64,000 bases of DNA from Ginglymostoma cirratum (GCA_024137785.1 JAHRHZ010000282.1:710401-774400), one strand, 5' to 3'. Shown: positions 9,780-34,961, numbered from the stretch's first letter. A program made the numbers and translations. Notes: generated by a model not told the origin, from the sequence alone.

Positions 9780-9857
9780 GTTTCTTTTTATATGAAGGAT
9801 TCTGTTATTGATTGTCAGTATCAGCGAATGTCTGTGACAGGCTCAGAGGTGCGCCAA

Positions 9858-9893
9858 TTTATACTTGCACAAAATCTACAGGGAGCCAATTAG
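9858..9893 (-). promoter_or_regulatory. Putative promoter of GPCR gene A: CTAATTGGCTCCCTGTAGA + TATAAA
   Basis: Motif at 9893-9875, conserved upstream of the other two exon-1 copies. TATAAA lies 11 nt downstream (9863-9858), about 80 nt before the ATG. Confidence 0.5.
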
Positions 9894-10461
9894 GTTCCCG
9901 AGATGTTTCGAGTTCTTTGAGCAAACAGATTCTGTTGCTACTCCCTATTTAGGAGATAGTAAAACGTTGGGAAGATCTTGTGAGGCGATTGTCGAGTCTT
10001 TTGATGTCCGATGATGATCCTTGCAGTTTTGCATATGGTATGCTTATACTTTGGTAAATCAACTTTGGGCTCACTCTGAGGGATTTTGCTTCTACAAAAT
10101 AGTGAAGGAATATCGTTTCCTATGAGGCCAGAGGCAAAAAAATGTGATTGCAATAGAGGAAGTGAGGATGATGATGACAGTGGCTGTCACATTCTGTTAA
10201 TATACTTACATTACATTGATGTGACAGGGGACATTCCCACACCATTCATGTTAAACACACATAAATTAAAGATACAAGGGGCAACCTCACAATGATAACG
10301 ACAGGAAACAAAATGTAGACAGAGAACGTGCTAGTGCAATGTAAAGAGGGGCAGAAGCTAGAGTAATATAACGAAATATAACTTTTGACGACATATTAAG
10401 AAGACAAAGTCAAGTGAAGAATCAATAATGGCTTAACAATGATTTTTTTTTTACTAAATTA

Positions 10462-10692
10462 AACCCGAAAGAACTGTGGATGCTATAAATCAGGAACAAA
10501 AACAAAGTTGCTGTACAAGCTCAGCAGGTCTGACAGCTTCTGTGATGTAAAAAATAGAGTAAACGTTTCGGGTGCGGTGACCCTTCTGAGGAAGGATCAC
10601 CGCACCTGAAACATTAACTGTGTTTTTTTTTCCTTTCCGTCACAGATGCTGCCAGACCTCCTGAGCTTTTCGTGCAACTTTGTTTTTGTTTT
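10462..10692. mobile_element. Palindromic PLE-derived short element (two inverted terminal-repeat halves)
   Basis: Arms ~10495-10586 and ~10591-10692 are reverse complements (aacgtttcgggtgcggtgacccttc / gaaggatcaccgcacctgaaacatt). Contains ctgagga...gaaac. Confidence 0.7.
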
Positions 10693-10699
10693 TAATTTT

Positions 10700-12560
10700 T
10701 GCTGTTCTTTCAGGGGATGCGGTTGTTACTGGTTTGTCCAGCAATTACTTCTGTAGAGAAAGTGGTAGGGTGAGCTCCCTTCTTGAACTGATAAAGTTCA
10801 TAGGGCATCCGAAGAGCTGTTAGGAGCGGAGTTTCATGTTTTCTGACCAAGCGACAGTGAAGAAACTGCGAAAGTTTTGAATTCAGGATTACCTGTGACT
10901 TGGAGGAGAAATTAGATGTGTTCTTGTTCATATGAGTAGCTGATCGAGTCCTTCTACATAGTGGAGCTGGCAGGTGGAAGGTGTCGAGGAACCTATGTGG
11001 TTTGCATTTCGTACATGGAACACTCTGCTGCTAAAGTGCATCGGTGGGGATTTTAGTGAATATCAACGATAGTAAATAGGAAAAAACACATAGATTCCTC
11101 ATATTTGACAGTTTCAAGCTGCGTGAGACCTCCTGGAACAGAACTCATCATTCATGTCGGGTGTTTTCCATCATATTATTGACTTTTTCGTGGTAAATGA
11201 TGACTGGTATGCAGACATTTTGAGGAAAACAAATGAGTTTATCTCCACGTAATTACCAGCATCACGGCATGTTCTTTTATGCATTGTATTTATTTGGCCA
11301 GTCTACTAAAATGTCTAGTAAATGTTAAACCGGGATATGGATAGTCGTGGATTCAGCTATGGTAATCATTGGTTATCAAGAGGCAATATTTAAATTCCCT
11401 CTCATTAGCGATAATCACATCCAGGAACTTACGTAGCATGCATGCTATTTTCACTTAATATTGCTGACCTGAGTGTCATCCAGATCTTGCTGCAGACAAA
11501 ATTCACTGCTTTCTTAACCGAGTAGTCAATAATGATGCTGGACATTGTGTAATCATCCAAGAGCATCTACACTTCTAACAATGTAATGTAGTGAAGATCC
11601 TTGAAGAAGCAGAAGAACAGATCTTGACATTGAAGACTACCCCTATGAAAGCCTGTGGTGATTTGCTGCCCCTGAGATGGATGGCCTTAGAAATCCAGTA
11701 TTGTAATTATTACTGCGAGGTATCACTGTAACTATTGGAGGTGAAGTAAGGTTCATTGCATTATGCTTGGTTAAATGTCGTTTGATGTCAATTGACCTCT
11801 GGAGTCTAACTCTTTTATCCTTATTTGGACCAAGACTGTAAAGCAGTCAGTAGCTGAGTGGAAATGGTGTAAAGCAAATTTCAGATCAGTTAGTAGGTTA
11901 TTATTTTCCTTGTTCTGGTTTATAACACTGTTGATGATGCCTTCCATCACTGTGAGAGAACACTGATCAGGTAGTTTATAGCATTGGATTTGTCCTGCAT
12001 TTTGCGCATTGAACAATGCTGACAAATTTTGCACATTACAATTGTGTATTCAGCTATATTCGATGACAAAGAACATTCGTACCACCATGCATAATACAGT
12101 GCAAATCTGTGCCAAAATATATAATCTAATTATCATCCTTTAAAGTTCATCGTCATTAGCATTGTTGAATTCCCAACTATCAAAATTCTGATGGTAATGA
12201 ATGGACGAATCTGAAATTGTCTAGCAAGATTATTGCTGCAGCTACAAGAGAACATTGACGAGAAATGAAAATTACTCTCAAACAGAGGTCAGGCATGGGC
12301 AGCGAATAACTGACCGGCTGACCTCCACACTCCCATGAAGTCTGTCCATCATCTACAATACACAATTGAAAACTATCACGCAAAACTGCCGACTTGCCTA
12401 GATGAGTGCAGGTCCAACAACATTCAAGAAGTTCGACATCATTTAGGACAGAGAATCTTGTATGATGGGCATCATTTGCAGAAGCAGTCATTCCTTCCAA
12501 CACAAGTAAACAAGGGAACTTGTGACTGGCTTGAAGCAATGCAGTATTTAGGGAAATATA
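10700..12560. mobile_element. Old, degraded LINE-derived sequence
   Basis: Scattered similarity to LINE-type repeat text (e.g. gatgctggacattgtgtaatcatc; tccaacaacattcaagaagttcgacatcat). No intact ORF; family and boundaries uncertain. Confidence 0.35.
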
Positions 12561-15107
12561 ATTATGTTTTTTTTAGCTGGATTCTGGACTGCTGTGACTG
12601 CCACAGTGGGGAAGTGACGCCAAACCCTACCACGTTGCAGAATTTCCAGTTAATGTTTATTGTCGGTTTCTATTGACTTCAATGTCACCTCAAGCCTGTT
12701 AAACAGAAAATAGAACAGCTTTATAAGTAAGGTCTTCGAATGTAATTTTCTGTATGGATAAAAGCGGTGCAGGCCTGAGTTTGTGAGCAGATATTATCAA
12801 TATCAGAACTCCAAAGCAGACTGTCAACAGGGAAGTGGGTGCATTTAACTTCTTCACTTAATCCAAGACATCATTCCTTTTGTGAAGAAATTCTTTGATC
12901 CCACCTATGTCATGGAACAGTTCTCTCTTTCTTGTCCTCTATCATTCTTGCGTGCTCTCCTTATCACTTTCTGCTCTACAGTCGATCTCAACTGAAACAG
13001 GCTGATGTGAATTGGTGACCTACAGACTGATCCCAATGCAAACAACTCGTGTCACACAACAGCAGTGTCCCTACATCTGCATTAGGAAGCCGGGGTTCAA
13101 GTCACTCCTGATCCACAGGCATGTCATAGCACCTTTGAACAGGTTAATTATAAAATATCTGAATCCAACACAACACTACTTGGAGGAAAAAATGGGGTGT
13201 GATACATTGCTATTCAGGTAAAAAAAATGCTGCTTCAGGCAATTGGTGACTATCACAGATATATTGCTGCTGGTATTAATTCCAAATACCTTTACACAAG
13301 CCATTATTTCCCGATCTTTCCACCCTAAGACAGAAACATGAAAACTTCGATTTGCAGGCAAGGTATTGAATATTTATATTTGAGTGACAGGGCTTCGGTA
13401 ATTTATATGGATTTCTAGTCAGAGATGAGGTTGAAATATTGAGAGGTGTTGTTTTTCAAGCACATTCAATGGTCAAGTTGTCTTACAGGGTAGAGGCTGT
13501 GGGTAGTCATCAGTTTGGACTTTTTTTAGAATAACAATTGAATCAGTTTTTTTGTAATATTTCTGGATGGTTTCATGAAGGTAGATGATTATCCATGATC
13601 ATATTCAATGGTGGAATAGGTTCACAACTTCGACTGACCTCCCGTGTTCATAATTCTTTTGTTTGTATCAGTTCAACTGTGACTTCTTAACCTCCTGAAA
13701 TAAAGGTGATCAGCTGCAGATTACACCAATAAGAAATGTTTGAGCTGGCCAGGCTTCTTTCATGGTAACATGGAAGCAGAAGGCCTCTACATGGAAATCA
13801 TTTAAATTGTGCACGGGTTCAATATGTTGGATGTGGAGCCACTTTCTTTTGAGTATGAGTCTACAGCCAAGAGCTGCCACTCGCAGAAGAAAACATATAA
13901 GGAAGAATATATCTGCACAGAAACGCATGAACACGTGGATTCCATTGAGATGCGGAGTGAGTGGTGAAGAAAAATATAGGATGAATAAAGGAGTAGAGAG
14001 ACACAGGTCCCATAAGGCAATAGTTCACCATCGGGGATTGGCTCGAGTGGGGGATAATCACATGTTTTCTAGTTATGGGTCAAATTGCCTGCCCCGAACC
14101 CGAAGATTGATTTTAATGTAAAACTCAGACAAAGGTACTCTCAGTGAACACGGGAGAGAATCAGCCGATGGTTTGCAAGGAATTGAAATTGTCAGAGATG
14201 TGGAAGAGGGAATTTCCAGTGAGTAACAGTAAAACCACAGCCAAAGCCGCACAAATGAAAACCAACTGACAGTTGTAGCCTTTAAGACACGTTGTCACGA
14301 TAATCACAACATACACGCAGAAATAACATGAAATTTCATATAAAAATTAAAACGAATGGAAACTCGAAGAAAAGTTTGACCCCCTTGTTGGAAAGAGTCA
14401 AATAGAACGGAAGTCAAGCAGAAGCTCTTGTGATGTGTTAAAGTGACAAAGAAGTTTTATGTTTCACTACCCATGCTTGTTGTCACTAAATCTATGGTTT
14501 CTAATGGAATTTCTTGCAGGCATTGATTGTACATAGTTGGGTTAACTCACAGAATTACCTGTTTGGAAAGTAATTGTTTTATTAGTGTTCGAATGTTTCT
14601 TTATGTTTTTCTTTCCACAAGGAAAACAGAAATAGAAATTTCTAATCACAGAATCGGGCAACATGGAGGAATTTTATGTGTGTATGTTTCCACTCCGGCA
14701 AGGAGTCATCTAATTATTTCTGGTATCTTCGCTGTTTCCCCATAAATACACGTACTTGTCGTGCTCATTATTTGTCAAATTAAAGTTGGAAAGTTATCGT
14801 TGAATCCACGTGCACCTATGCAAATATAACAGACTATATCGCGCACTGAATCAAGTGAAAATAATCATCTGGTAAGTTGCAAGTTATGATAAGTATCACG
14901 AATACAGAATTGATCCTGAGATTAACATGTTTCCGCCATCAAATGTGAAGGAGCAAACACAGGAAAGAAAAAGAACCCCTGCAGATTCAGTTCGCTGGTG
15001 CCCCAGAGTCCACCTCCACAAAGCTTTACAGTCAAGTTTTGTACAGCTCAATCCTTGCTCTCTATCAATGTGTGTCTTTATTCCCAAAATCTTCAATTTT
15101 TTTTTTA

Positions 15108-15320
15108 CAGCTCTCTCAGGGCTCTATATCACGGTGCCAGTAATCTCACCATGTTCAGATTCTTGGACAGCTCTCTCCGGGCTCTACAACATTGTGTCTA
15201 TAACCCTCACCATGTTCAGGTTTTGCATCAGATCTCTCCGGGATCCATGTCACTGTATCTGTAAGCTCACCGTGTTTGAGTATTTGTAGAGCTCTCCCCA
15301 TCCTCTGTCTCACTATGTGT
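15108..15320 (+). repeat. ~60-bp tandem minisatellite, ~3.5 degenerate copies
   Basis: Unit agctctctc(a/c)gggctcta...ctcaccatgttcag recurs at ~15109, 15169, 15230 and 15290. Confidence 0.75.
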
Positions 15321-16144
15321 GCTGATATGCCGACTCAGTGAACAGTAATAAACAGTGGAGGTTCTCAGTTGTATTTTAGAGATCTTTACCTGGTTGGTTT
15401 TCACTGAAAAATCAATGGAAGCAGCAAGTCCTTCCCGGGCAGTGTTTTCTTTATTCCCCTGTTTTTGAAGCAGATATTTCAGAACCTGTCTTGGGGACTG
15501 ACTGTACCAGTAAGCTGCATATTGACAGAACCCTTTATATTCGTAGCTTGAAGTAGCATGGTCACCAGCAGCAGAGGTTGTAAATGTGGACTCTGGGACA
15601 TCAGAGAACTGGAATCTATGAGATTAAAAGTAGACGTTTGTTTAGAATAGTTCTTCTGTATCAAAGATATGAACAGCTCTGTCAATAAGGCATTTTGTTC
15701 AATTTCGAGCTATTTCGATATGTCTTCACTCTAATTTGAAAAGAAAACACAGCCTGGAAATGTCGACATCTGTTTCTTTGGAAAAGAAAAAGCAAGTGTT
15801 CTGATCATGATCACATGACAGAATAGAGGGTGAAAAGAAATGATTCAGGAGTAACCTTAAAACGGGAATTGGGAAAAAGAAAACCTGAAGCATTGAATAA
15901 TTCCAGGATCACGAAGAAATGTAAGGGGAAGTTCACAGTTTGAACATATCTTGGAAGAATCCGCGGGGTCATTATGGAGCGTATAATAAGATTTTGCTCT
16001 GTTTAATCGCCGGATTAAGATTGAATATCTGCACATATATTACTTTGAAAAACACACATATCCGAAATATTTAACAGTTAATTCCGCTTTTCTCTGTGAC
16101 AGTCATTTTCAGAATAAGTTGATGGAGAGTAGCCCCATTGTATG

Positions 16145-16565
16145 TGTCAGAGATGGTTAGATCTGCAGATACTGGAGTCAGAGATAACATAATGTGGAGC
16201 TGGAGGAGCAGAGCAGACCAGGCAGCATCATAGGAACAAAAAAGTTGTCTTTGGGGTTGGAACGATTCTTCGGAAATGGTAATGGGGAAGGGAGGTCAGA
16301 AATGAATAGAGAGAAGAGTGAGGGTGCTGGAAAAGGTAAATGGGATGGTGATAGGTGAGTGCAGGTAGGTAGTGGTGGGGATTGGTCAGTGAGGTAGGCG
16401 GGGCAAATAGGTGGGAGAGAAGATGGACAGGTTGTATCAGGTCAAGGAGGCGGGATGAGAGGGAGGGTTGGTCATGGAATGAGATCGGGGGTGGGGTGAT
16501 TTTGAAAAGGGTGAAATCCATGTTAAATCCCCCAACCCCGGCCTCATCCCATGACCAACCCTCTG
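16145..16565 (-). mobile_element. Penelope-like element 3' fragment with short terminal inversion
   Basis: Reverse complement resembles the 3' region of the 1705-3590 element (ctgcagatactggag, cagcatca, gtgaaatccatgtt). 16532-16564 is an inverted copy of ~16463-16495. Confidence 0.65.
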
Positions 16566-20740: not shown

Positions 20741-21864
20741 GTCAACCAGATTAAAGTGTCAACCAGATTATGGGTTTTCATCTATCGGCAATTGTATGAA
20801 AGAGTACTCTTTGCAAGGACAGGAACCCTGGGGAGATATCTCATATGGAGGGCTCTTGTTATGACCTGCTGTGTTCCAGTCAATTATGTGTCAAAAATGT
20901 TTCTGTGTGATGATTCATGGTAGAAAAGTGCTCTGCATGTTGCTGCTGCGTATGATAGGCTGAGTTCTGAGTTCCAGACTGTTCAGGCAGCATTGCACAA
21001 CTTTGATCCAGAAAGATTGCTTAGTAGTTTTCTCCTGGCTTTGACATTTTCTGATTTTTCTTCAGATTTTCCAGGAAGGACAAAGTTTTACATCAGGTCC
21101 TGCAAAGATTAAGACTCTGTTTCAATTCTCTCATGGAGCATGGTTGTTTTCCAAATTGTTGTCCAACGTAAAAAGGGCAAGTTTAGATTTGACTTTATTG
21201 AATTAAGCCAAACTGAAGCCATCTTGCACAGACAGCATGGAGCCTTGCTGGAACTGACCTGGTATATGTGGGCAAAGCTACACTGACGTGAAATTGTACA
21301 TAAGCACTGTCCCAGTTTTCATTGAACTTATGCATTTACTGAACTGGTCATATCGAAATGTTGAAATAAACATGTTCGTAATGGGTATAATAGTATTGGG
21401 CTGCCGCTTTGAATATAGCAGCAGTGACCTGGGAAGATGTGGTTATTTTTAAATGAAGAATGAACTCGTGCATCCTGAATGTAACTACTTTGAGGGACCA
21501 ATCGACAATTTTGGCGAAATCAATTGAGTTACAAGCTATATGGTCTCAAAATCACATTGCACTTAGCTAGTGATCAAACAGACACAACAGTTCTGAGGAG
21601 AGAGAAGATGATCATTTCCGCCAAGACTTTTATATTTCACAGACTGGTCAAGCGTCTCTTTCGGCTCAAAATCTAGGCAACTCTCTTTCTTTTATCTAGA
21701 GAAATACAACTGGTCCAGTTGTACAATCTCTGGCTATTTCATGTTCGAACAGTGTCTTAACCCATGAAATATAATACATTCTACCTTATCAGCAAAATCA
21801 GTCGAGCATCAACTGCACTGATCTGTTTTGTTTCAACACGTTATTTATGTAAAAGATCAAATAT

Positions 21865-21902
21865 CTAATTATCTCCCTGTAGACTTGTCCCCAGCTACAA
21901 AT
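21865..21902 (+). promoter_or_regulatory. Putative promoter of GPCR gene B: CTAATTATCTCCCTGTAGA + TACAAAT
   Basis: Same motif as upstream of gene A and the orphan exon 1, with a TATA-like element at equivalent spacing. Confidence 0.45.
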
Positions 21903-21952
21903 GTGATCATTTTACAGTGAAATGTAGAATGCACCCAGAGCTTGTGATCGAA

Positions 21953-24900
21953 ATGCACGGAATACCCAAAGGTCTGGTGTTTGCCATTTACTATCCCGTT
22001 GTTGCAGCAATCGGAGTACCAGGTGAGGTATAGGTCTTCAGTCGTAGCTGAGTGGCTTATAGGTGTACTGCATCAATTCTTCATTTTTCTAGTAACACGA
22101 CTCCAAAATAAATATTCTTCCTCCGTTTTAACTAGCTACATATTTCACGTTATTGGTCGATATTGTTCCCCTTATCTGATATACTTTGTGGTTTTTTTTC
22201 ACACCATCATTCTTCTTCTGAAATCGTTTTACTTCGCTGATTAAGTCATTGACTGAGATGGTTTTTCTAAATAAATACTTTAATTTCTCTCATTTAGATG
22301 TTATTATAACAGTTAACCTGCATAGTTTCTTCTTGCAATATGTCTAATTTACCCTTTAAGTCTTGTGTGCCTCAGTGAGACAGACGCCATTTCACTCTCG
22401 TAATAATTTTCTTCCAATTTCTCCTACCACCTCACGATAGCAACATGGTTATATTGTTTTATTCGTAGTCATGGGGGTGATATATGATTTTTTTTCATCG
22501 ATTGAATGCTATTATCCTGTAATTATTAGCAATGCTTTTGAGGGAAAATTGACACAAAATTATTATGGTGTAAACACAGTTGTACTTTTGGTATTGCCAC
22601 TTCTATGGCGCATAAATTACTAGAATGTCATCACAGTTCAAATGGACCCCAGCATGTTATTGGCTCTAATACTGATGGTGAATTATCGCATTATTAGTAG
22701 CATGAAATTCCAGATTTAGTGTGTTATTCCTATAATTACTTTGGGTCTGTTAACACCTTGTTACTAAGGTGCAAATAGGAACTTATTGTGCTACTGAAGT
22801 GATAACAGTGACCGAGTTATTTTAAAAATACTTCGTTGAATGAGAGGGAGGGACATTTAAATCATTCATTCAGAGAATGTGAACGCCATTGGCTGGGACA
22901 GCATTTATTGTTATTTCCTAGTTGCCCTTAGAAAAGCGGTGCTGAGCTGCCTTTTTGAAATTTTGTAATCGTGAGGTTCAGTTCAACACACGAAATCGTG
23001 AGGCGATGTTCCAGGATTTTGATCTCCTTCCTAATGGCATTGTCATTCAACCTAAACAAAATGTTGTTTGTGATTCAAAACTGCAGTTCACCGCCTACTG
23101 AAGGACAGTTAAGGATGGATTATTAAGAAAACTTGTTTCAATCAATGAAGCATTACTATGTATTGTCCTATGACAACTATCACTGTGGGCGAATTGTCGC
23201 CTTGTCATCGTAATGTCAATCAAATAATGCCAGAGTAATTGCCAGATTTGAGAGAATGTGATCATTGCAAAAGTGATTGAATTTATTGAAAGGTCATTAT
23301 TAGTCGAGAAGATGTTTACTGATATACAAGAAATGTATTTTTTGTTCTCCAGCATGGTTATTTGCCACTTGGCCCTGAAACACAGAGCAATTTTGTTTTC
23401 TGTTTTCAGGCTCTAGTTTTTCAGCTCAACTCTGCCCTTACACATTCAATGTTGTTGATGCTTCTAATTTGATGTTCGCTGAGACAGAATTTCCTCCAAC
23501 TGCAAGGAGCTTCTAATGTCGTGCATTCTCCCAATCTTCATCAGTGTCCACATATTGGCTGAGAACTTTTGGTATATCTTAAAGAGACTCAAAAAATGAA
23601 ATGAGGAAAAAGAGCTTGGAAAAGGAGCTCATCGAATGTTTTCCGGATAGATTCTGAGCTTTTTCTAGATTCAGTATTGGAGCTGGCTCCAAAGGGTGTA
23701 TTCTGCAGCAAGATTGGCTAAATTGCTGACATCATAATGTCAGCTTCATAGAGATCATAATGTGATTACATTTTACCTTCAGTTTAAGGCTGAGAAGAGT
23801 AGGCCTAAGTCTATACTTTCAAACTGAGATAAGTGCAATCAGGGCACAAACGTCCTTCTCATCAGTGAACTGGCAAATTGTAATAAAGGATACCTGAATA
23901 ACGATGTAACAGTAAACCTTCAAGGGAATGTTAGAGAACAGAAAGAAGAGGGCAGATACATCCTAAACAGAAATTAATATTCCAAGAAGAGGATCTACGC
24001 TCTGTCGTGCACTGAAGAAGCGAAAAATATTATCAGACTTAAAGAAATATCCTAGAACTGTGCAAAAACTGACTAGTGTGCAGATGCATTCAGGAAATTG
24101 GAAATCGAGCCGAAATTAATTGTTTATTATGAGAAAAATTGAATTCGAATGCAGGCTGGTTATGCCTCGGTTGTGAAGGACGTTGTGAGATCACATATAA
24201 ATGACTGCGCAGAGCAATGGTTTCCTTTTTTATGGAATGTTATAAATAATTTGGAAACAATTCAGAGAAGATACAGTTTATCGTACTGATTCACAGCATG
24301 TCAGGGATGAATATCAAAAGTCTTCACTATCATAATGAAGTCATAGAATCATACAGAGCAGAAACAGACACTTCGATCCAACCAGTCCATGCCCACCATC
24401 ATCCCAAACGAAACTAGAACCACCTGCCTGCGTATATCCCCAAATCCATACCATCACTTTTTATTCACGTACTTATCTAAACGTCTTTTAAACGTTGTAA
24501 CTGTATCTGCATCTATCACTTCCGCTGGAACTTCATTCCGCACAAGAATCAATCATTGTGTAAAAGAAATGTCCATCATATCATTTTGTACATCCTTCTC
24601 CTTTTACCTTAAAAATATTCCTCTGGTCTTGAAATTGACCACCCTAGAAAAAATACAATTTCCATTCACCTTATTAATAACCCTCTTTATTTTATAAACC
24701 TCTATAAGGTCACGCCTCAACTTCAGACATTCCAGTGAAAAAGGTCCTAGCCAAAACAGCCTCTTGTTGTAATTGAACCCATCCATTCCCAGCAACATCT
24801 TGATAAATCTCTTCTGAACCCTGTCCATGTTAATAACATCCTTCCTATAAGCTGAAGAACACATTGCTATCATTCCACGGCTTCCCACGTTTCTTTCCAA

Positions 24901-26314
24901 AACTGAGAGAAATGTATATTGGTCACGCACCTCCTTATGTTTCAGTATACATCTTAGCAAATAAATTGCTGACATTCCCAACAATGAATGATGGCACCAT
25001 ATTTTATTAGAAGGAGCCAGATTTGATCCTCAATGAGCTGTTAACCGTGTTTCTGAAAATGTCCTCACTCGTTGATGATCGTTTTAATATTTACCTACTC
25101 CAATACTTTCTGTAATGTTTTGCTGCTGTATTTTTTTTCGGTTCCCTTACTCTATATTCTATATACTAGATAGAACTTAGAATTATTTGTTTTCTCTGCT
25201 AAAAACCCAACAGAATACTTTGTACCTTATGCCATTAATACATATGCTTTTAATCTGGATATCTCTTTGAAATGCAATAACTATTATCTCGTGCAATGTA
25301 TACATGCTACAAAGTTATGTGCCTCAAAGAGAATCTAGAAAAACGGACAATTTTGATGGAAGTTGAAAAAGTAATTTGCCTGTTTTTATGTCTCCTTCCA
25401 TCTTTCTTTTTACAGCTAATTTGACCGTGATTGTGATCCTGTCTCAAAAAAGATGCGGTCTCTCTAGGTGTATGATTTATTACCTGGTGTCCATGGCGGT
25501 GACAGATCTCTTGGTCCTGGTCACCTCTGTAATACTAAACCGGATTGCTGGGATTTATTTCCCGTACAGTTTCCTGTCCATCACTCCAGTTTGCAGTCTC
25601 CGTACTGTCTTAACTTCCACTGTCGTAGACAGCTCTACTTGGTTAACTGTCACTTTCACCTTTGATCGATTTGTAGTGATTTCATGTCAGAAACTTAAAA
25701 TAAAATACTGCACCAGGAAGACAGCAACATGCGTCACAGGAATCGTGTCTGCATTGTGTACTTTAAAAAATGCATTTTTGTATTTTATATATGAACCTCT
25801 GTACACATTTAACAATGTACCCTGGTTCTGCAAGCCAAAATTAATATTTTATATGTCACCTTCATGGATCACATATGACTTGATTCGTTGCATTTTCAAC
25901 CCTCTTCTCCCATTCATTCTGATTTTACTGTTAAATGCTTTGACCGTTAGATATATTCTCGTGGCCAATAGAGCCCGCAGGAGACTCAGGGCCCAGAGCC
26001 ACGGAGAGAATCAGAATGACCCACAGTTGGAGAAGCGGAGGAAGTCCATTGTTTTACTCTTTGCCATATCAGGCAATTTCCTCTTATTGTATTTCTTATT
26101 TTTTATATCGATTCTCTATGTCCGAATTGCAAAGGTTTCCTACTTCTCCGGTTCAGATTTCAGTGAATCGACTTTTATCCTTGAGGAAAATGGGTTTATG
26201 TTTTTATTTTTGTGTTCCTGCATCAACCCATTTATTTATGCTGGAACCCAGAACAAATTCAGAGTCGAGTTAAAGAATGGGCTGAAATATCCACTGCGTC
26301 GATTTCTTAAATGA
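21953..26314 (+). CDS. GPR139-like class A GPCR, 2 exons (21953-22022; 25416-26314), 322 aa (possible in-frame upstream ATG at 21929)
   Basis: Exon 1 MHGIPKGLVFAIYYPVVAAIGVP G|gtgagg. Acceptor tttacag|CT AAT gives ANLTVIVIL. 7TM ORF with MAVTDLL, TFDRFVV, LPFILILLLN, RRKSIVLL and CINPFIY. Intact. Confidence 0.9.
24340..24850 (-). mobile_element. CR1-type LINE 3' fragment in the intron of GPCR gene B
   Basis: Minus-strand YRKDVINMDRVQKRFIKML...LRRDLIEVYKI; tail catagaatcatacag. Confidence 0.85.
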
Positions 26315-28182: not shown

Positions 28183-29939
28183 GTCACAGAGTCCTACAGC
28201 AAAGAAACAGATCCTTCGGCCTGTCATGTCTATGCCAACCAAGAAAGACTAACTTGCACCAATCCCATTTTCCTGGAACTAGTCCATAGTCGAATATGGC
28301 CTGGCATTTTGTGTGTTGATACAGATGCTTCTGTAATGTTACGGGAATACCTACCTGCACAAACATCTCAGGCAGCACTTTCTATAATTGTTCCATTCCA
28401 GAAGCGATATTCTTTTGTCTCAGATCGCTTCTAAACTATATATTCCTCATCTTAAAGTTATGCCTTTTGGTCTTAAACACATTTACCTTGCGGAAAATAA
28501 AAATTTCACCAGCTTATCTGTCTCTGTCTCTGATAATTTTGTATCCCTCAATCAGATCCCGCTCCCTTTCCCCCAAAGGTCCCATCGATCAAATGAAAGC
28601 AAAGTTCAATGAAAGTTTTCATCCCAGGCTTATTTTTCGTGAATCTCCTCTGCATCGTCTCCGATCTAATCAAGTCCTTCCCATAGTGTGACGTAGGACT
28701 ACAAACAGTATTGCATCTGTGGCCTAATCAATGTTTTATACAGTTGTAACAAGACTTCTTTGCTGCTATATTCTACTCCCAGCTAATGAAGATAAGCATA
28801 CCGTTTGCCTTCTTCACCACCCTGTCCCTCAGAACTTTCTTTTATTACATTCCGACCACTGATGTCAGACGCACTGGCCTGTAATTTTCTGTCTATTCCT
28901 GCTTCCTTCTTGAACAAAGGAACTACATTAGCTATTGTCCAGTTATGTGGCGCTTTACCTGTGGCCAGAGAAATATCTGCCAGATTCTCATAGCATCTCG
29001 GGGTGCATCTTATCAGCCCCTGGGAATCTATACACCTTTGTGCTCGCTAATAAAAAATCTCATTTCCCTTCCTTATAAATCTCAACATGCTCTAGATACT
29101 CACAACCCCAGCTGAAATCCCCACTGACAGTGTCTTTCTCCTCTAAAAATACAAGTGAGAAGCAGTCATTTAAGTCCTCACCCATGCCCACTGGCTCCAC
29201 GTACAGGTTCCCCCATTGGTCGCTAAAAAAAGCAACTCTCTTTCCCTGGAATTCCTCTTACTCGGATACAATTGTGAAATGTCTTGGTATCTTCTGATCC
29301 CATCTTCTTATCTTCCTGATCCCATCTCCCATAAGAAATTTCATGGACCCCCTTTGCCCTTCTAATTTCTTTAGTTTTTAAACAACCANNNNNNNNNNNN
29401 NNNNNNNNNNNNNNNNNNNNNNNNNNNNNNNNNNNNNNNNNNNNNNNNNNNNNNNNNNNNNNNNNNNNNNNNNNNNNNNNNNNNNNNNNNNNNNNNNNNN
29501 NNNNNNNNNNNNNNNNNNNNNNNNNNNNNNNNNNNNNNNNTAATGCAAAGTAACTGACGGATATTTCCTTCGTTTCCTATACCTGTCAATTGCATCCCCT
29601 GACATCCAGGGTTCTCTGGACTTGTTGGCTTTAAACTTCACTTGTTGAGCAGCATACCGGACCGGAATTCTCATTATGGTACTTCAAAATGTCTCTCAGT
29701 TTCCAAATGTAGACTTATGTGCAGTTATCTGTTACCAGTCTGTGTTTGACAGAGCCTGTCAAATTGTATTGAACTTGGCTTTCCTCCAATTTAGACACTT
29801 AACTCCTGCACTATCCTTAGCCTTTCCATTATGACTATAAACTTGCAGAGTTATGAGAACTGTTCCCTTAATTCTCTCACACGGACACATCTATCACATG
29901 ATTGACTTCATTCTGTAGAATTCAGTCTAGCATTGTTCC
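28183..29939 (-). mobile_element. Degraded CR1-type LINE (spans an assembly gap)
   Basis: CR1-like 3' tail at ~28183 (cacagagtcctacagc..gaaacagatccttcggcc) and internal text such as SREPWMSGD on the minus strand. Confidence 0.65.
29389..29540. other. Assembly gap
   Basis: N run. Confidence 1.
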
Positions 29940-30899
29940 TGTGATAAAGCAGAGGATGACATCCCCATCCTCCCCACCCCAAACCCCCCAGAACTGAAAT
30001 TGAATCACCCAAAGAGGATCATCTCTCCCTATAGCCTGTAAAAAGAGTGTCAGAAGTGGTGCAACCTGCGCTTCAGCAACTTCTGGTGGTTAGAGAAAAT
30101 AAACACCCCTACAATCATTTTAAAATTACAAAAACAAGTTTATTTATGACTCCAACAGTGAATAAATTAACTAAACTACTAACAAACAGACTAAATCCCT
30201 TCTAATTACAAACTATTCCTGAATAAAGCAAGATTCTAAAGGTATGTTGTTCTAATAAATACATATCCCACCTTTATCAAAAAAAATTAGTCTTTCGAGC
30301 TTTCAGCCATGTTACCTGTCTTCCGGAATGTTCTGTGCTGTCACCGTCGAATCTCCTGTCAGGAATATTAACTAGTTACTTAGATGTCGCTTTCTGTAAG
30401 ACATAGAGGAGGCTGTGAGAGCTAGCGATTCTCTCTGGAGAGCTGAAGGCTGTTAGATTTGACAGGTGGCAGCTCGCTCTCAGGCTTTGTCCAACTGCCC
30501 CCTTCATTTATACAGTTGATGACATATCAATATTTCTTCAATAACATTGGTCCGATGTCGTCAAAACAATTAGAATTAAATTTAATAGATTTGCGTTATC
30601 TATGTACCTGGTTCAAACTAACTGGCCAAATTCAAAAGCCTGCTGCCTTGGTAAAGCTTGCTTCTTGGCCTGCTAACTATACAGCTTTTCGATACAAATG
30701 CTTCAATACGGGTGTTCTCTGTCTACTTGCAAACTTTCAAACTGATGCTCACAGATATCCATGTAAAATTTCTAAGCAAGAAAAAGCACATGATCTTTTA
30801 AAAGGACCTCGCAATGCTTTCCTCCATAGCAACTTTAGAAAGACCAAATTCTAACTTCTTGCCTCCCCAACCACATCTACTCTACCCAGTTTCGTAACA
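29940..30899 (-). mobile_element. Probable solo LTR inserted in the CR1
   Basis: TG...CA termini with a short inverted repeat (tgtgataaa / ttcgtaaca), imperfect 4-bp flanks ttcc/tgcc, minus-strand TATA (~30507-30512) and AATAAA (~30141-30146). Confidence 0.5.
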
Positions 30900-31503
30900 T
30901 GCCTCAGCTGAGCACGAAGAGGAGCCTTTCAACTTTCAAACGGATTGCAAAAACTTTAGACGGATTGCAAAACGATGTGGCAGAATAAGTTCAAGTGGTT
31001 TGGACGTGCTTTACCTCCCATGTTCTTTGACCTCCATAATCAGTACGGGAAGTGGCTTCAGAAATCATATCCCTGGATGTGTGTCACATTTCCACATTGC
31101 TATTTACGCTCCATCTCCCACGCCCATTGCTTTATCCTGTACGAATTATTTTCAAAGAAATCAATCCTTCAATGTTTGGATGATTTTGTTTGATGATGGT
31201 TCTTGCCCCAAATATCTAATTCATTCATAACGTGCGTGGAAATATGATAAAAAGCATTTGATTTTGCAAAGTACGGAAGGTGCAAAAAAATTCAATCCTT
31301 CTCCTCACAGAATGCTCCTCCTTATTCTGTTGAACACAATCCCAGTATTCTTAACAGCTTTGTTTCTGTACAATTATGACCACATGGCAAACCCAGGCCA
31401 TTGTTGGTTCCATTCATTCCACATTTGACATTACTGACCGCACTGTGGACACAAAGTTGTTGCTTCAGTTCTTCTAGTGTACAGTCCCAGAATTCACAAG
31501 CTA

Positions 31504-31927
31504 GCTGTTTGTACTCGATCTGTTGTATCTCTGCATCAGTGTGAGGATTTTAGGGCACAAACATACATGCCGCTTTTGCTGTAAAAATATCCAGATACTT
31601 AAAGTTACCATGTTATTTCCTTTAAGTAAGTTAAAAATGAATCAGTCTTGTAATTCTGAAGGCTGATAACCATCTTCTATGTATCTTCAGTATATATCTC
31701 AGAATTTCCCGTGGGTACTAGATGTACCAGATTTGGGTTCCACTGGCATAAGCTACCAAGAAACATCAGTGCTGATTTATGTGTTCTCCCTTCCAGAACA
31801 TAAATGCGGATGAATTTTGCAACACTAAATCAAAAGTACAAAATGTTTCATTTAACAGGGAATAAAAGCACCTCCTGGAAAACGCACTCACTATTTAAGA
31901 AAAAAGCTAACCTGCCTGAAAGTCCAT
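31504..31927 (-). pseudogene. TCR V pseudogene (TRAV/TRDV-like) with RSS
   Basis: Minus strand: decayed leader with a gtgagt donor (~31891). Then VLQNSS..KGEHINQH*C..QIWYI*YP..ELQD*FIFNLLKGNNMVTLSI..SGMYVCALK. Heptamer cacactg (31543-31537), 24-nt spacer, nonamer acaaacagc. Stops and frameshifts. Confidence 0.75.
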
Positions 31928-32365
31928 TCTTATTGGCGAGGAATACAGAAAGCAAATGGTATCTGGTTTATGTTTTGAAAGGAAATACTAAAATATTTTA
32001 AATGTGTTGCCCCGCCTAGTCTGATGTTAATGTGCCGCCAGGATCAGGTTTCACTTACTGAGAGGCTGAAGGCATTTTCGCAATTCTCTGTCAAAGCAGA
32101 TGACAGCTGCGAACAAAGCAATGGGATCTGTCGGGATTAACTTCCTCTGATCATTTGTGTTTCTTCTCTGACATTCTCAGTGTCCCTTTGTCTCCGTATC
32201 TTTGCACTGATTTCTGCCTCTTCCTGATAAGTGTACCTCTCCTTGAAACAGACATCCTCTCGGCCATAAAATGCACGTCAATTAATCCCATCCAAATAAT
32301 GCAATAATCTGATGTTCTTTAGGGAGGCTAACTGTTGTCCTCACCTGGTCACGACTACATGTGAC

Positions 32366-32499
32366 NNNNNNNNNNNNNNNNNNNNNNNNNNNNNNNNNNN
32401 NNNNNNNNNNNNNNNNNNNNNNNNNNNNNNNNNNNNNNNNNNNNNNNNNNNNNNNNNNNNNNNNNNNNNNNNNNNNNNNNNNNNNNNNNNNNNNNNNNN
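32366..32499. other. Assembly gap
   Basis: N run. Confidence 1.
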
Positions 32500-32603
32500 T
32501 TTAAAGTTCTACCGCATCACCGTCATTGAGAGTTGTTGTCTTCACAGCAAGTCCTAGTCTGAAAACCAGAGCCTGATTGATCCTCCTATCCATCTTTATC
32601 CTC

Positions 32604-33070
32604 ATGAAAAGGAAGACCTGCAATGACCTGTTCTCACTTGCAGCTCTGATATTCTTGGTATTGCGTAACTTTAGTTTTTTAATCAGGCGCCTTGTTTTAT
32701 CAATCCCTCTATAGTTGGTTATGTTTGAGTAACGTTTCTTTTGTTACAGCAATTCAACGTGAGAATCAAAGCTCATAGGCTGGTCAAGTGCTATCTTTGG
32801 AAGGGGATCTAGTTGAATTGGACTGTTGGTTCTCCATTCGTTCTGGTGCTAATGTAGCCTGGTACAGACAAACACTGACAGGGCCTCTGTCATTTATTTG
32901 CTACATGTGCCAGCGTAATGTCGCAATTGGACGCGACACTCTTTCATTTGACAGAGAAAAGAAGGATAAAACCATTTTGTTTGAGCACAATGAGGTCGAG
33001 GATGCTGGAGTGTATGACTGTGCGATGCAGGTACTGTGAGACAACCAGTGGGTCTGGTCCTACAAAATCT
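32604..33070 (+). pseudogene. TCR V pseudogene with leader and mutated 23-RSS
   Basis: Leader 32604-32664 (..LFSLAALIFLVL, gt donor). V exon from 32750 with an in-frame TAG at 32776; ELDC, AWYRQ, EDAGVYDCAMQ. Heptamer tactgtg (33032), 23-nt spacer, nonamer acaaaatct. Confidence 0.8.
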
Positions 33071-33273
33071 TCCATTGTACTGTGTCTCCATGTGCAGTAA
33101 ACTTTCACCAAAACAAGGAATTTACAAGAAAGAGTAATTTGAGAAAAATTACTTTTCAACTCAAACTTCCAGATGGATTAATTTACAACATCCTATCACC
33201 GATAAATTTTATAGGATCATATTAAATCGGATTTTCTGTGTGTGCAACATGAAAAATAAATGATGACCATGAA

Positions 33274-33402
33274 NNNNNNNNNNNNNNNNNNNNNNNNNNN
33301 NNNNNNNNNNNNNNNNNNNNNNNNNNNNNNNNNNNNNNNNNNNNNNNNNNNNNNNNNNNNNNNNNNNNNNNNNNNNNNNNNNNNNNNNNNNNNNNNNNNN
33401 NN
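33274..33402. other. Assembly gap
   Basis: N run. Confidence 1.
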
Positions 33403-33444
33403 TTTGTCATGTGTTGAGGTTGTTCAGACTCATCGTGTTTTGCA

Positions 33445-33815
33445 GCTACTTCTTCTCACCCAGAGAATTTCCAGTATCAGATTATCAGGGAACTGTTGGT
33501 CAAACCATTTTCCTTCAAGGCAAAACTATTTGTGCTTCGATTGACTTTGTATTCTGCTGCAGACACTCCTGCTATTAAATTCCAAATACCTCATCTCACC
33601 TTTCAGATATTTTCTTCAGATACTCCAGGAATGACAAGGACCTGTGCAAAATTACTTCAAGTTATCTTTGTTTGGGACCATGCTTTAGTCTTTGACTATT
33701 GATGTAAATGCGCAATTCTTTCACGACAAAAGCATTGTACAGGCAGAATAAAATGCATGTGGTTTCAGACAAGCCCAATATGAGACACCATTTATGGCAG
33801 TGTGTCACACAATGT
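33445..33815 (+). pseudogene. Possible decayed V-segment relic
   Basis: After acceptor ttttgcag: LLTQ..SGTVGQTIFLQ..IDFVFCCRH (from VFWYRQ?), KYLI, SLTID.NAQ across frames. RSS is only vestigial. Confidence 0.35.
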
Positions 33816-34806
33816 TTCTGGCGTCGTTATTAAAGATATTGATCAGGGTGTTCAAAGTTGGGGATACAATCTTTGGAAGCCAGCTTTCTCGTCGAGGTTA
33901 TTACTCATAACCGTTACCTTTCTTTGTGTCTGAACATTCCAAACCGTAAAATATGCGTAAAATATGTTAGTTTTCTTCAAACCTGCGCCAATGCACATCA
34001 CAATGAGTTTCACTAAATTACAAGCTCCTCATTAATGTGTTGGTTTTATACCAATTCCTGTAAAGCTTTACACTGTCATGCAATTCCCTTACGGGATGTA
34101 GTTGTTGTCCAACTGTTGCTCCGCCATAAAAAAAGGCCAGTTTGGATGTGACCACGTTGAATTCAACTAAGCTGGAGTCAACTCGCTCCAGAATGCATGG
34201 GGCCTTGCAAGAATTGATCTGCTTCCTGGTGAAACAATTCCGCACTGATATAAAATTGTGAAATTTATTAAAATTAGGTTTGCGCCAAACCGATATACAT
34301 CGATTAGAGTGACTATGTTGAATTTGACGTGTGCATACTGAGTTTAACACTATTGAGCTGTTGTGTTGGATGTCGCGGCACAAACCTGGCCAGGTATGGT
34401 TATGTATCAGTAAAGATTGGGCTCATGCTCCCCGATTTGTAACTACTTTGAGGAACCTATCGACAATGTTAATGCAATCAATTCTTTTACAGGGTCTCAA
34501 AATCACATTGCACTTGGCAAGTGATTAAATAGGCAGAATAATTTTCAGGAGCGAGAGGATGGTTATGTCTTCCAAGACAATTTATATTTATCAAACTGGT
34601 AGGTAATGAAGACGTCTGTTTTGTCCCAAAATCCAATTAAGTGTCTTTCTTTTATATGAGGAAATGCAACTGGGACAGTTCTACGATCTGTGGCTATTTC
34701 ATATTGGAGCAGTGTCTCCGCACGTGATAAACAATTCATTCTATGAGCAGCAGAGGCACTGATCTGTTTTGTTCCAACGAATGTATTAATGTAAAATACC
34801 AAGCAT

Positions 34807-34961
34807 CTAATTATCTCCCTGCAGGTTTGTCACCAACTACGAAAGTCATCGTTGTGCAATGAAGTTCATCATGCACTGGCGTTTGTGTTACAAATGCACA
34901 GAATACCAAAAGTCTGATGATGCCATTTACTATCCCGACCTTGCAGTAATCGGAATGCCAG
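34807..34961 (+). pseudogene. Orphan GPR139-like exon 1 (frameshifted) with promoter motif
   Basis: 34894-34961 aligns to gene B exon 1 (MHRIP..AIYYPDLAVIGMP G|gtgaag) but is 68 nt long with TGA at 34915. CTAATTATCTCCCTGCAGG at 34807-34825. Confidence 0.85.

What the first reader, a model, noticed from the sequence alone, without database searches (positions are those of the whole stretch)
9858..34825. Shared homeodomain + Olf/EBF-like composite motif upstream of every GPR139-like exon 1: candidate unrecognised chemosensory receptor family
Seen in the sequence: CTAATTGGCTCCCTGTAGA (9893-9875, minus), CTAATTATCTCCCTGTAGA (21865-21883) and CTAATTATCTCCCTGCAGG (34807-34825) lie 70-100 nt upstream of the three exon-1 ATGs. 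A TATA-like box follows 11-12 nt later in the intact genes, and a second shared motif (..ATCTGTTT) lies further upstream. Genes A and B otherwise show little upstream similarity. Established knowledge: adjacent TAATT homeodomain (Lhx2) and TCCCNNGGGA-like O/E (EBF) sites characterise mammalian olfactory-receptor promoters and enhancers. GPR139 is activated by L-Trp/L-Phe. Cartilaginous fishes have few canonical ORs. Inference: this clustered, birth-and-death GPR139-like family with very short N-termini may be amino-acid chemoreceptors under OR-like control. Caveats: the O/E match is imperfect (TCCCTGTAGA), and the motif could instead be a splice acceptor (pyrimidine tract + YAG) of a 5' UTR intron.
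Basis: partly seen in the sequence, partly recalled or inferred. Interest (0 to 1): 0.8.

Follow-up and report, generated by a model that had tools for sequence, protein, structure and literature searches.

The report
Conserved upstream motif, shark orphan receptors
Two working genes and one dead gene copy of a large, unstudied shark receptor family carry the same 18-letter DNA block just upstream of their first exon; it looks more like a promoter switch than a splice signal, and it resembles the switch that controls smell-receptor genes in mice, but with only two independent examples and no expression data the link to smell is untested.

Summary
The motif CTAATTRKCTCCCTGYAG is real. It occurs exactly three times in the window, each 68-96 nt upstream of an exon-1 ATG of a two-exon GPR139-like GPCR gene.

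- **Independence:** sites B and C belong to one old duplication (~67-70% identity over 2.4 kb), so only genes A and B count. Between A and B the block (16/18) is the only alignable non-coding DNA. It is moderately significant: 5/300 shuffles, better if position is considered.
- **Second motif:** the shared ATCTGTTT is at chance level (P about 0.13).
- **Splice-acceptor rival weakened:** the family's real exon-2 acceptors share only 8/18 letters between A and B and score far higher. A TATAAAT box and an Inr-like site follow at promoter spacing in gene A.
- **Resemblance to mouse elements:** the block has the same TAATT-N3-TCCC register as an EMSA-tested mouse Lhx2/Ebf composite site. Its second O/E half-site is poor, and it fails the published degenerate pattern.
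- **Not available:** no RNA data could be obtained, and no paralogue DNA from elsewhere.

My estimates: promoter element about 0.5, splice acceptor about 0.25, olfactory-type control about 0.15. Earlier notes of this scan flagged the family in other windows of this genome. None recorded this motif.

The parts
9875..9893 (-). Gene A copy of the motif, CTAATTGGCTCCCTGTAGA
   Evidence: It matches B at 16/18 and is the only non-coding block that aligns between A and B.
9857..9863 (-). Gene A TATA box, TATAAAT, 11 nt downstream of the motif
   Evidence: The chance of TATAAA within 5-25 nt is about 0.018. The joint chance with an aligned match of at most one mismatch in B is about 3e-4 (own simulation).
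9833..9838 (-). Gene A Inr-like GTCACA; the A at 9835 is the predicted TSS, 28 nt after the first T of the TATA box
   Evidence: Sequence read. Inference only; no transcript data.
9710..9779 (-). Gene A exon 1 coding part (ATG 9779, 70 nt, donor G|GTGAGT)
   Evidence: Its N-terminus, MHGRITGLVYAIYYPILAAIGIP, matches the family N-termini.
7652..8562 (-). Gene A exon 2 (acceptor TTTCAG|TA, runs to the stop); intact 7tm_1 receptor
   Evidence: 96% identical to a whale-shark 'probable GPR139' protein.
21865..21883 (+). Gene B copy of the motif, CTAATTATCTCCCTGTAGA
21896..21902 (+). Gene B TATA-like TACAAAT, 12 nt downstream of the motif
21953..22022 (+). Gene B exon 1 coding part (aligned ATG 21953; in-frame upstream ATG at 21929; donor G|GTGAGG)
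25416..26314 (+). Gene B exon 2 (acceptor TTTTTACAG|CT, runs to the stop); intact 7tm_1 receptor, 56% identical to A
34807..34825 (+). Relic C copy of the motif, CTAATTATCTCCCTGCAGG
   Evidence: Part of the B/C duplication, so not independent of B.
34894..34961 (+). Relic C exon 1: 68 nt instead of 70, so frameshifted. No exon 2 follows on this strand.
38701..39479 (-). Pseudogene D: a frameshifted exon-2 relic of a distant family member, with no exon-1 or motif cassette in the window
9923..9930 (-). Second shared motif, ATCTGTTT, in A (counterparts at 21821-21828 in B and 34762-34769 in C).
   Evidence: P about 0.13.

Best explanation
The 18-19-nt block is a promoter-proximal transcription-factor binding element of the two-exon GPR139-like receptor genes. 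It sits 11-12 nt upstream of a TATA or TATA-like box. That places it about 40-58 nt upstream of the predicted start of transcription (near 9835 in gene A and about 21925 in gene B), so exon 1 would be the true first exon with a 5' leader of roughly 30-55 nt.

Its conserved letters fall into two parts. The first is a Q50-homeodomain core, (C)TAATT. Three bases further on is CTCCCTGYAG(A), whose first half, TCCC, is an O/E (EBF) half-site. This is the same register as in the mouse Lhx2/Ebf composite site.

The likely mechanism is that a homeodomain protein and a second factor bind side by side next to TBP and set the cell type in which these receptors are transcribed.

- **Shown:** the block, its position, its isolation as the only conserved non-coding island, the TATA box, and the register match.
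- **Inferred:** that transcription starts downstream of it, that proteins bind it, and which proteins.

I put the identity 'Lhx2-like plus EBF' at about 0.25 and expression in olfactory or other chemosensory neurons at about 0.15.
For: 1. **Isolated conserved island.** Between paralogues A and B (56% protein identity) only exon 2, exon 1 and this block align. The flanks are at shuffle level.
2. **Internal control.** The functional exon-2 acceptors of the same two genes share only 8 of their last 18 nt, against 16/18 for the block. The block is therefore kept letter by letter, as a protein-binding site would be, and not just by composition.
3. **Weak as an acceptor.** The motif has 11-12/16 pyrimidines and scores 4.1-5.4 on a rough PWM, at the 90th-93rd percentile of all AGs in the window. 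The real acceptors have 13-15/16, score 10.2-13.8 and sit at the 99.2-100th percentile.
4. **Core promoter signals.** TATAAAT lies 11 nt downstream in A, with an aligned TACAAAT in B (joint chance about 3e-4), and an Inr-like GTCACA lies 28 nt after the TATA box in A. With that start site, gene B's two ATG-stop mini-ORFs (21901, 21922) fall outside the transcript.
5. **Specific pattern.** TAATTNNNTCCC occurs only at the three sites, with 0.57 expected.
6. **Match to tested mouse elements.** The register equals the EMSA-tested Sfaktiria composite, TTAATTGATCTCC... A 2-bp insertion between the two halves of that probe impaired its ability to compete for binding (PMC5608512 text; probes).
7. **Match to mouse OR promoters.** These are enriched for O/E sites near the TSS and for TATA boxes at -60 to -10 (PMC3247239).
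8. **Not a repeat.** The block is not part of a high-copy repeat: contig depth is 0 at 9801-10000, against huge peaks at true repeats nearby.
Against: - Only two independent genes carry it, and the statistical support is moderate (5/300 shuffles; blastn E 0.73).
- No transcript, TSS or binding data of any kind are available.
- The block also reads as branch point (CTAAT) + pyrimidines + YAG.
- The second O/E half-site is poor: TAGA instead of GRGA, one mismatch to TCCCYNGRGA. Such one-mismatch matches are frequent by chance (51 found, 37 expected).
- None of the three sites fits the published degenerate composite pattern, which is itself at chance frequency (124 found, 130 expected).
- B's box, TACAAAT, is a weak TATA.
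- In mouse, composites mark distant enhancers and are depleted from OR promoters (PMC11643329).
- TAATT is generic for many homeodomain proteins.
Confidence: 0.5

Rival explanations
1. The block is the 3' splice site of a 5'-UTR intron: CTAAT is the branch point, T..CTCCCT the pyrimidine tract and YAG the acceptor. The ATG-bearing exon (166 nt in A, 140 nt in B) would then be an internal exon, and the real promoter would lie further upstream.
For: - All three parts of an acceptor are present, and the two variable letters fall between the branch point and the tract.
- The one change in relic C keeps Y at -3 (TAG to CAG).
- The resulting exon sizes would be ordinary.
- Receptor genes often have non-coding 5' exons (general knowledge).
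- Several database models of this family join alternative upstream exons to exon 2 (P0009, P0014, P0056, P0072, P0082, P0088, P0099, P0106). Upstream exons are therefore predicted in the family, although none of these models joins at this site.
Against: - The tract is weak and the score mediocre (90th-93rd percentile of all AGs, against 99.2-100th for the real acceptors).
- The branch A would lie only about 14 nt from the AG, at the short end of the usual range.
- Real acceptors of the same gene pair are not conserved letter by letter (8/18 against 16/18).
- A TATA box and an Inr-like site downstream would have to be coincidence.
- An O/E-type site (TCCCYNGRGA) looks like pyrimidines followed by AG by its nature, so the resemblance is expected under the promoter reading.
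Confidence: 0.25
2. The block has no function of its own. It is a chance survival of ancestral sequence, or a chance match, between two paralogous upstream regions, noticed because it resembles a familiar motif.
For: - A 16/18 window arises in 1.7% of shuffled 600-nt pairs, and the blastn E-value was 0.73 over the whole loci.
- C adds nothing independent.
- The second 'shared motif' is at chance level, which shows how easily such matches arise.
- Degenerate factor patterns hit at chance frequency.
Against: - The block is collinear with the two exons and lies at a similar distance from the ATG in both genes.
- It is followed by aligned TATA-like boxes (joint chance about 3e-4).
- All other non-coding DNA between A and B has decayed to shuffle level, so neutral survival of 16/18 letters is unlikely.
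Confidence: 0.12
3. The block is a promoter element but is read by factors unrelated to olfaction. Examples are a brain homeodomain protein, as fits the habenula and striatum expression of true GPR139, or lymphoid factors, given that the genes sit in a TCR V-gene array. The family would then not be chemosensory.
For: - TAATT is bound by many homeodomain families (general knowledge).
- GPR139 proper is a brain receptor (PMC5430874).
- The window holds a TCR-type V segment at 46465-46851, and earlier notes place the family inside TCR V arrays.
- The catshark nose appears to hold only microvillous, V2R-type neurons (PMC10116579).
Against: - The exact TAATT-N3-TCCC register of the Lhx2/Ebf composite would be a coincidence.
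- The family has the genomic habits of chemoreceptors: a very large lineage-specific expansion, clusters and many relics.
- Sparse one-receptor-per-cell expression would not appear in a top-50 list.
Confidence: 0.3

Closest known systems
Mouse Lhx2/Ebf 'composite' motif of the olfactory-receptor enhancers called Greek Islands (Monahan et al. 2017, PMC5608512; PMC11643329)
   Same: - A homeodomain core, TAATT, is followed after three bases by a pyrimidine-rich EBF half-site and then purines.
- The register is identical to the EMSA-tested Sfaktiria probe: TAATT GAT CTCC AA GGAA in mouse, TAATT GGC TCCC TG TAGA in gene A.
- The mouse work reports that the Ebf half of composites is degenerate while the spacing is strict.
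   Different: - The first G of the second half-site is T in the shark, so the sites fail the published pattern WWAHDRRBHHHHNDRDD.
- The shark block lies about 12 nt from a TATA box in a promoter. In mouse the composite marks distant enhancers and is depleted from OR promoters.
- Binding by Lhx2 or Ebf is untested here.
Mouse olfactory-receptor promoters: O/E and homeodomain sites near the TSS, and a TATA box in a subset (Young et al. 2011, PMC3247239)
   Same: - The region is AT-rich.
- An O/E-like site and a homeodomain site lie within about 60 nt of the predicted TSS.
- A TATA box lies at about -28.
- The core TCCCTGTAGA has one mismatch to the MatInspector V$NOLF core TCCCyngrga.
   Different: - The receptor family is unrelated to ORs.
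- In mouse promoters the two sites are not at a fixed distance from each other.
- The TSS here is only predicted.
Generic vertebrate 3' splice site (branch point, pyrimidine tract, YAG)
   Same: CTAAT, a short pyrimidine run and YAG are all present and in the right order.
   Different: - It is much weaker than the family's real acceptors.
- It is conserved letter by letter, unlike them.
- No spliced read is available.
GPR139 / GPR142, orphan class A receptors (GPR139 structures 7vug-7vuj)
   Same: - It belongs to the rhodopsin family (7tm_1).
- GPR139 is the nearest solved structure.
- Public annotation names the family 'probable GPR139'.
- W6.48 and the N of the NML motif at the top of TM7 are kept.
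   Different: - The relationship is distant (E 2e-10, 44 bits).
- It is a large expansion specific to sharks and rays rather than a single conserved gene.
- The pocket residues needed for L-Trp/L-Phe activation are only partly kept: F3.33 aligns with Y, R6.51 with Y, and H5.43 is not His (alignment read against PMC5430874).

Membership tests
Lhx2/Ebf composite motif (Greek Island type) | A homeodomain site and an Ebf-like site side by side at a fixed spacing (1 bp between the 7-nt Lhx2 site and the Ebf site) | tested here: met
   TAATTGG-C-TCCC in A and TAATTAT-C-TCCC in B and C. This is the same register as the Sfaktiria EMSA probe, TAATTGA-T-CTCC. TAATTNNNTCCC occurs only at the three sites, with 0.57 expected.
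Lhx2/Ebf composite motif (Greek Island type) | [quoted passage not shown] | tested here: not met
   There are 124 exact matches in the window against 130 expected, and none is at the three sites. A fails at position 15 (T). B and C fail at positions 7 and 15.
Lhx2/Ebf composite motif (Greek Island type) | Lies in intergenic enhancers and is depleted from receptor promoters | tested here: not met
   Here it lies 11-12 nt upstream of a TATA-like box and about 70-115 nt from the ATG. The mouse data are in PMC5608512 and PMC11643329.
Lhx2/Ebf composite motif (Greek Island type) | Bound by Lhx2 and Ebf in olfactory neurons | not testable with these tools
   Needs EMSA or CUT&RUN with the shark proteins.
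Olfactory-receptor-type promoter | An O/E site (TCCCyngrga) close to the TSS | tested here: inconclusive
   TCCCTGTAGA in A and B has one mismatch. Matches with at most one mismatch number 51 in the window against 37 expected. C does not fit. The TSS is only predicted.
Olfactory-receptor-type promoter | A TATA box at -60 to -10 (found in a subset of OR promoters) | tested here: inconclusive
   TATAAAT in A and TACAAAT in B at aligned positions. Whether they lie at -30 depends on an unmeasured TSS.
Olfactory-receptor-type promoter | Sparse, one-receptor-per-neuron expression in the olfactory epithelium | not testable with these tools
   No RNA run holds the gene. The literature held here says nothing on this family.
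3' splice site of a 5'-UTR intron | YAG preceded by a pyrimidine tract and a branch point | tested here: inconclusive
   The pattern is present but weak: 11-12/16 pyrimidines and the 90th-93rd percentile of all AGs, against 13-15/16 and the 99.2-100th percentile for the real acceptors. The PWM is my own rough one.
3' splice site of a 5'-UTR intron | Reads spliced at the AG | not testable with these tools
   The only runs on offer were contig sets without transcript signal at exon 1.
GPR139-type amino-acid receptor | Closest relative among characterised receptors is GPR139 | tested here: met
   7vug and 9m42 (GPR139) are the top PDB hits, but only at E 2.1e-10. The next are GPR21 and GPR52 at about 1e-6.
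GPR139-type amino-acid receptor | Pocket residues needed for L-Trp/L-Phe activation: F3.33, H5.43, W6.48, N7.38 and the polar anchor R6.51 (PMC5430874) | tested here: not met
   Read from the alignment: W6.48 and the N of NML are kept, 3.33 is Y, 6.51 is Y (no positive charge), and 5.43 is not His. The TM5 alignment has gaps, so that position is uncertain.
Chemosensory receptor gene family (genomic habits) | Large lineage-specific expansion in clusters, with frequent pseudogenes | tested here: met
   All of the 120 best hits that carry a species name come from sharks, rays or skates; one unnamed Logan protein is the exception. All score E below 1e-120 and many lie on single chromosome-scale contigs. 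The window holds 2 intact genes and 2 relics. These habits are typical of chemoreceptors but are not proof.
Chemosensory receptor gene family (genomic habits) | Variation concentrated at ligand-facing positions | tested here: inconclusive
   Entropy over 90 full-length members peaks in the outer half of TM3, ECL2 and the top of TM5, the top of TM6 through ECL3 to TM7, and both termini. The inner halves are invariant. Most GPCR families show the same trend, and no 3-D mapping was done.

The most novel reading that the evidence does not exclude
The shark-and-ray GPR139-like expansion is a so far unrecognised chemosensory (olfactory) receptor repertoire. Its genes would be switched on through an Lhx2/Ebf-type composite site built directly into each promoter. 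That would place the homeodomain-plus-O/E logic of receptor choice before the split of cartilaginous and bony vertebrates, and would show that it can serve a receptor family unrelated to ORs.
Probability: 0.13. Interest if true: 0.85.

Novelty: new member of a known kind. Interest (0 to 1): 0.45.

Why it matters
Sharks are known for their sense of smell, yet they have almost no canonical odorant receptors. Their nose is currently described as V2R-only and microvillous (PMC10116579, PMC3797960). A family of very many clustered, fast-turning-over orphan GPCRs with no known function is an obvious candidate for a missing repertoire. The paper library searched here says nothing about it.

A short, precisely definable promoter element gives a concrete handle on the question. 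It can be scanned across all paralogues, tested for binding by Lhx2 and Ebf, and used to drive reporters. If it proves to be an ordinary promoter element or a splice acceptor, the result is only a small piece of gene annotation.

Tried and rejected
- **Paralogue and orthologue DNA.** This is the main limit of the report.
- **Sequencing runs.** Only three runs were offered, and none is on record as RNA. Laid on 7401-13400, X1 behaves like a fragmented 2.6-Gb DNA contig set. It covers only exon 2 and the 3' end at 96-98% identity, plus repeats. X2 and X3 hit only repeats. There were no joints at exon borders and nothing at the motif.
- **Metagenome scan with a family alignment.** It returned 23 loci, all distant GPCRs (23-45% identity) from other organisms and none from this family.
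- **N-terminal extensions of database models.** I read the extensions of P0010, P0092, P0065 and P0019 as possible translations of upstream DNA. A frameshift-tolerant protein-to-DNA alignment against the upstream regions of A and B scored no better than shuffled peptides (P 0.3-0.8). I dropped an apparent 'LPC'/'ISxxLP' resemblance seen.
- **B versus C identity profile.** The motif is not better kept than its surroundings, so this gives no extra evidence.
- **Second motif, ATCTGTTT.** Chance level.
- **Published degenerate composite pattern.** Too permissive to discriminate: 124 matches against 130 expected.
- **CCAAT box or GATA site.** A carries GCCAAT on the opposite strand, and B and C carry AGATAA. 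Both fall on the two variable letters and are not shared, so I rejected them.
- **Search for further exon-1 or motif cassettes.** An nhmmer profile of the three found none.
- **Earlier notes of this scan.** They record the family in other windows but not the motif.
- **Spliced model.** I did not search or fold a joined exon 1 + exon 2 model. The exons were handled apart. A local script added the single shared G only to check the reading frame.

Full report
**What is in the sequence.** They are the only matches to CTAATTRKCTCCCTGYAG in the window even when three mismatches are allowed; 0.24 are expected by chance. Each lies upstream of a short first coding exon of a rhodopsin-family receptor gene.

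**Gene anatomy.**
- Gene A (minus strand): ATG at 9779, a 70-nt coding part of exon 1 ending G|GTGAGT at 9710, and exon 2 at 8562-7652.
- Gene B (plus strand): aligned ATG at 21953 with an in-frame ATG at 21929, exon 1 ending at 22022, and exon 2 at 25416-26314.
- Both exon-2 products match Pfam 7tm_1. The two are 56% identical.
- Site C precedes a frameshifted 68-nt exon-1 relic (34894-34961) with no exon 2 on its strand.
- A fourth, distant member, pseudogene D (39479-38701, minus strand), has no exon-1 cassette. A profile built from the three cassettes finds no further copy.
- The AG of the block lies 96, 70 and 68 nt from the aligned ATGs. A TATA-like heptamer follows after 11-12 nt: TATAAAT in A, TACAAAT in B, TACGAAA in C.

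**Assembly gaps.** The three gaps (29389-29540, 32366-32499, 33274-33402) all lie in intergenic DNA between B and C. No exon, motif or alignment used here crosses them. They leave open only the true B-C distance and the order and orientation of the piece that carries C. I did not try to fill them.

**How many independent observations.** B and C are copies from one old duplication: 21048-23487 aligns with 33601-36721 at 67-70% identity. Along that alignment the motif window (0.80-0.82) is no better kept than several others. The evidence therefore rests on A versus B.

**A versus B.** Over the whole loci only three blocks align: exon 2, exon 1 and the 22-nt motif block. The 100 nt upstream and the stretch down to the ATG are at shuffle level (60/100 against 55.4+/-3.3; 48/96 against 46.6+/-2.6). 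The block is an isolated island, but the statistics are moderate. A 16/18 window somewhere in two 600-nt sequences arose in 5 of 300 Markov shuffles, and the blastn E-value was 0.73. Requiring a similar distance from the ATG improves this by roughly an order of magnitude (my estimate).

**Splice acceptor or promoter element.** The block reads as CTAAT (branch point), a pyrimidine run and YAG. Three observations count against it.
1. The same gene pair gives an internal control. The real exon-2 acceptors (A TTTCTTTGCCCATTTCAG, B CCATCTTTCTTTTTACAG) share only 8 of 18 letters, although both work. The upstream block shares 16 of 18. It is kept by letter, not by composition.
2. The block is a mediocre acceptor. 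With a rough position matrix of my own, the real acceptors score 10.2-13.8 and sit at the 99.2-100th percentile of all AGs in the window. The motif AGs of the intact genes score 4.1 and 5.4, at the 90th and 93rd percentile. The branch A would also lie only about 14 nt from the AG.
3. Gene A has a canonical TATAAAT 11 nt downstream, and 28 nt after that an Inr-like GTCACA. B has an aligned one-mismatch box. The joint chance is about 3e-4 in my simulation. A start near 21925 would also leave gene B's two ATG-stop mini-ORFs outside the mRNA.

An O/E-type site (TCCCYNGRGA) is pyrimidines followed by AG by its nature, so a resemblance to an acceptor is expected under the promoter reading. The reverse is not true. 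None of this replaces transcript data, and I leave the acceptor reading at about 0.25.

**Comparison with the olfactory elements.** I tested four points against published sequences rather than memory.
- **Register.** The EMSA probes of Monahan et al. 2017 (supplementary file 7) give a tested mouse composite, TTAATTGATCTCCAAGGAAT. The shark blocks have the same register (TAATT, three bases, then the C-rich half-site), and a 2-bp insertion impaired that probe's ability to compete. The strict pattern TAATTNNNTCCC occurs only at the three sites, with 0.57 expected.
- **OMP probe.** The mouse OMP O/E probe contains GGGCTCCCTGGGGA. Gene A has GGCTCCCTGTAGA, identical for nine letters and then TA where the mouse has GG.
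- **O/E core.** Against the MatInspector core TCCCyngrga (Young et al. 2011), A and B have one mismatch. Such one-mismatch matches are common: 51 in the window against 37 expected.
- **Degenerate composite pattern.** The pattern later used by the same laboratory hits the window at chance frequency (124 against 130). It does not include any of the three sites, which fail at the first G of the second half-site.

In addition, those papers stress that composites mark distant enhancers and are depleted from OR promoters, while promoters carry separate O/E and homeodomain sites, and some carry a TATA box. The shark arrangement, a composite-like site hard against a TATA box, would therefore be a variant and not a copy. 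The homeodomain half is generic.

**Expression.** I found no evidence either way.
- The run search offered three runs, none on record as RNA.
- Laid on 7401-13400, X1 is a 2.6-Gb set of short contigs that covers exon 2 and the 3' end at 96-98% identity, plus obvious repeats (about 9.2, 10.5 and 12.4 kb). The other two runs hit repeats only. No joint lies at an exon border, and there is no depth at 9801-10000.
- A metagenome scan returned only unrelated GPCRs.
- Reading N-terminally extended database models as translated upstream DNA gave nothing above shuffles.

**The family and the chemosensory idea.**
- All of the 120 best protein hits that carry a species name come from sharks, rays or skates; one unnamed Logan protein is the exception. 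Nearly all are named 'probable G-protein coupled receptor 139', and many lie on the same chromosome-scale contigs. The best is a whale-shark protein at 96% identity.
- GPR139 is the nearest solved structure, but only at E 2e-10.
- Of the residues that mutagenesis ties to activation by L-Trp and L-Phe (PMC5430874), W6.48 and the TM7 Asn are kept. F3.33 aligns with Tyr, the polar anchor R6.51 aligns with Tyr, and 5.43 is not His. GPR139's ligands therefore say little about this family.
- Across 90 full-length members, variation peaks in the outer half of TM3, ECL2 and the top of TM5, and the top of TM6 through ECL3 to TM7. This fits ligand diversification but is also the usual GPCR pattern.
- The library holds no paper on this expansion.
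- The catshark literature describes a nose with microvillous neurons only, V2Rs as the main family and no OR expression. [quoted passage not shown] This lowers the prior and raises the interest if the idea is true.

**Verdict.**
- The best reading is a promoter-proximal protein-binding element next to a TATA-type core promoter (about 0.5).
- A splice acceptor of a 5'-UTR intron remains possible (about 0.25), and chance survival is less likely (about 0.12).
- That the element is read by Lhx2-like and EBF factors is plausible on register but weak on the second half-site (about 0.25).
- That the family is chemosensory under OR-like control is untested (about 0.13-0.15).
- Earlier notes of this scan flagged the same family in several other windows of this genome, inside TCR V arrays. 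None mentions this motif.

Noticed in passing
window 46465-46851 (+): An intact-looking immunoglobulin V-set ORF ending ...YFCA (Pfam V-set, E 2e-17), i.e. a TCR-type V segment about 7 kb from the receptor relics. The receptor genes lie at the edge of, or inside, a TCR V array, as earlier notes report for neighbouring windows. From memory only: the mammalian TCR-alpha locus is also flanked by olfactory receptor genes. I did not test this.
   Followed up: partly
window 21048-23487 versus 33601-36721: An old duplication (67-70% identity) copied gene B's upstream DNA, exon 1 and the first 1.5 kb of its intron. The copy (C) has lost exon 2. Where exon 2 would be expected (about 38.6 kb) there is instead an unrelated, opposite-strand family relic (D), only about 39% identical to A and B.
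   Followed up: partly
window 21901-21931: Gene B has two ATG-stop mini-ORFs (ATG TGA at 21901, ATG TAG at 21922) and an in-frame ATG at 21929, eight codons before the family-typical MHG start. Which of these are in the mRNA depends on the unmeasured start site.
   Followed up: no
proteins P0009, P0014, P0056, P0072, P0082, P0088, P0099, P0106, P0018, P0019, P0045, P0054: Many database models of this family replace exon 1 with unrelated upstream coding exons joined to exon 2, or fuse neighbouring paralogues. Either the clusters produce read-through or chimeric transcripts, or gene predictors are misled by the tandem arrays.
   Followed up: no
window about 9190-9245, 10460-10700 and 12340-12600: Very high contig depth in all three runs (up to 2e5) marks high-copy interspersed repeats in the intron of, and upstream of, gene A.
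   Followed up: no
window 1648-2655 (+) and 2000-4000: A reverse-transcriptase-like ORF (RVT_1, E 3.8e-5, below Pfam's cut-off), followed by a C-rich, proline-coding low-complexity stretch with strong GC skew (-0.41). This is probably a decayed retroelement. A further retroelement-like ORF at 60909-61451 (-) has no Pfam match.
   Followed up: partly
window 25416-25423: Gene B's exon 2 begins CTAATTTG (coding Ala-Asn-Leu), so the hexamer CTAATT recurs immediately after a real acceptor. This is a coincidence of coding sequence, but it is a reminder that the hexamer alone means little.
   Followed up: no
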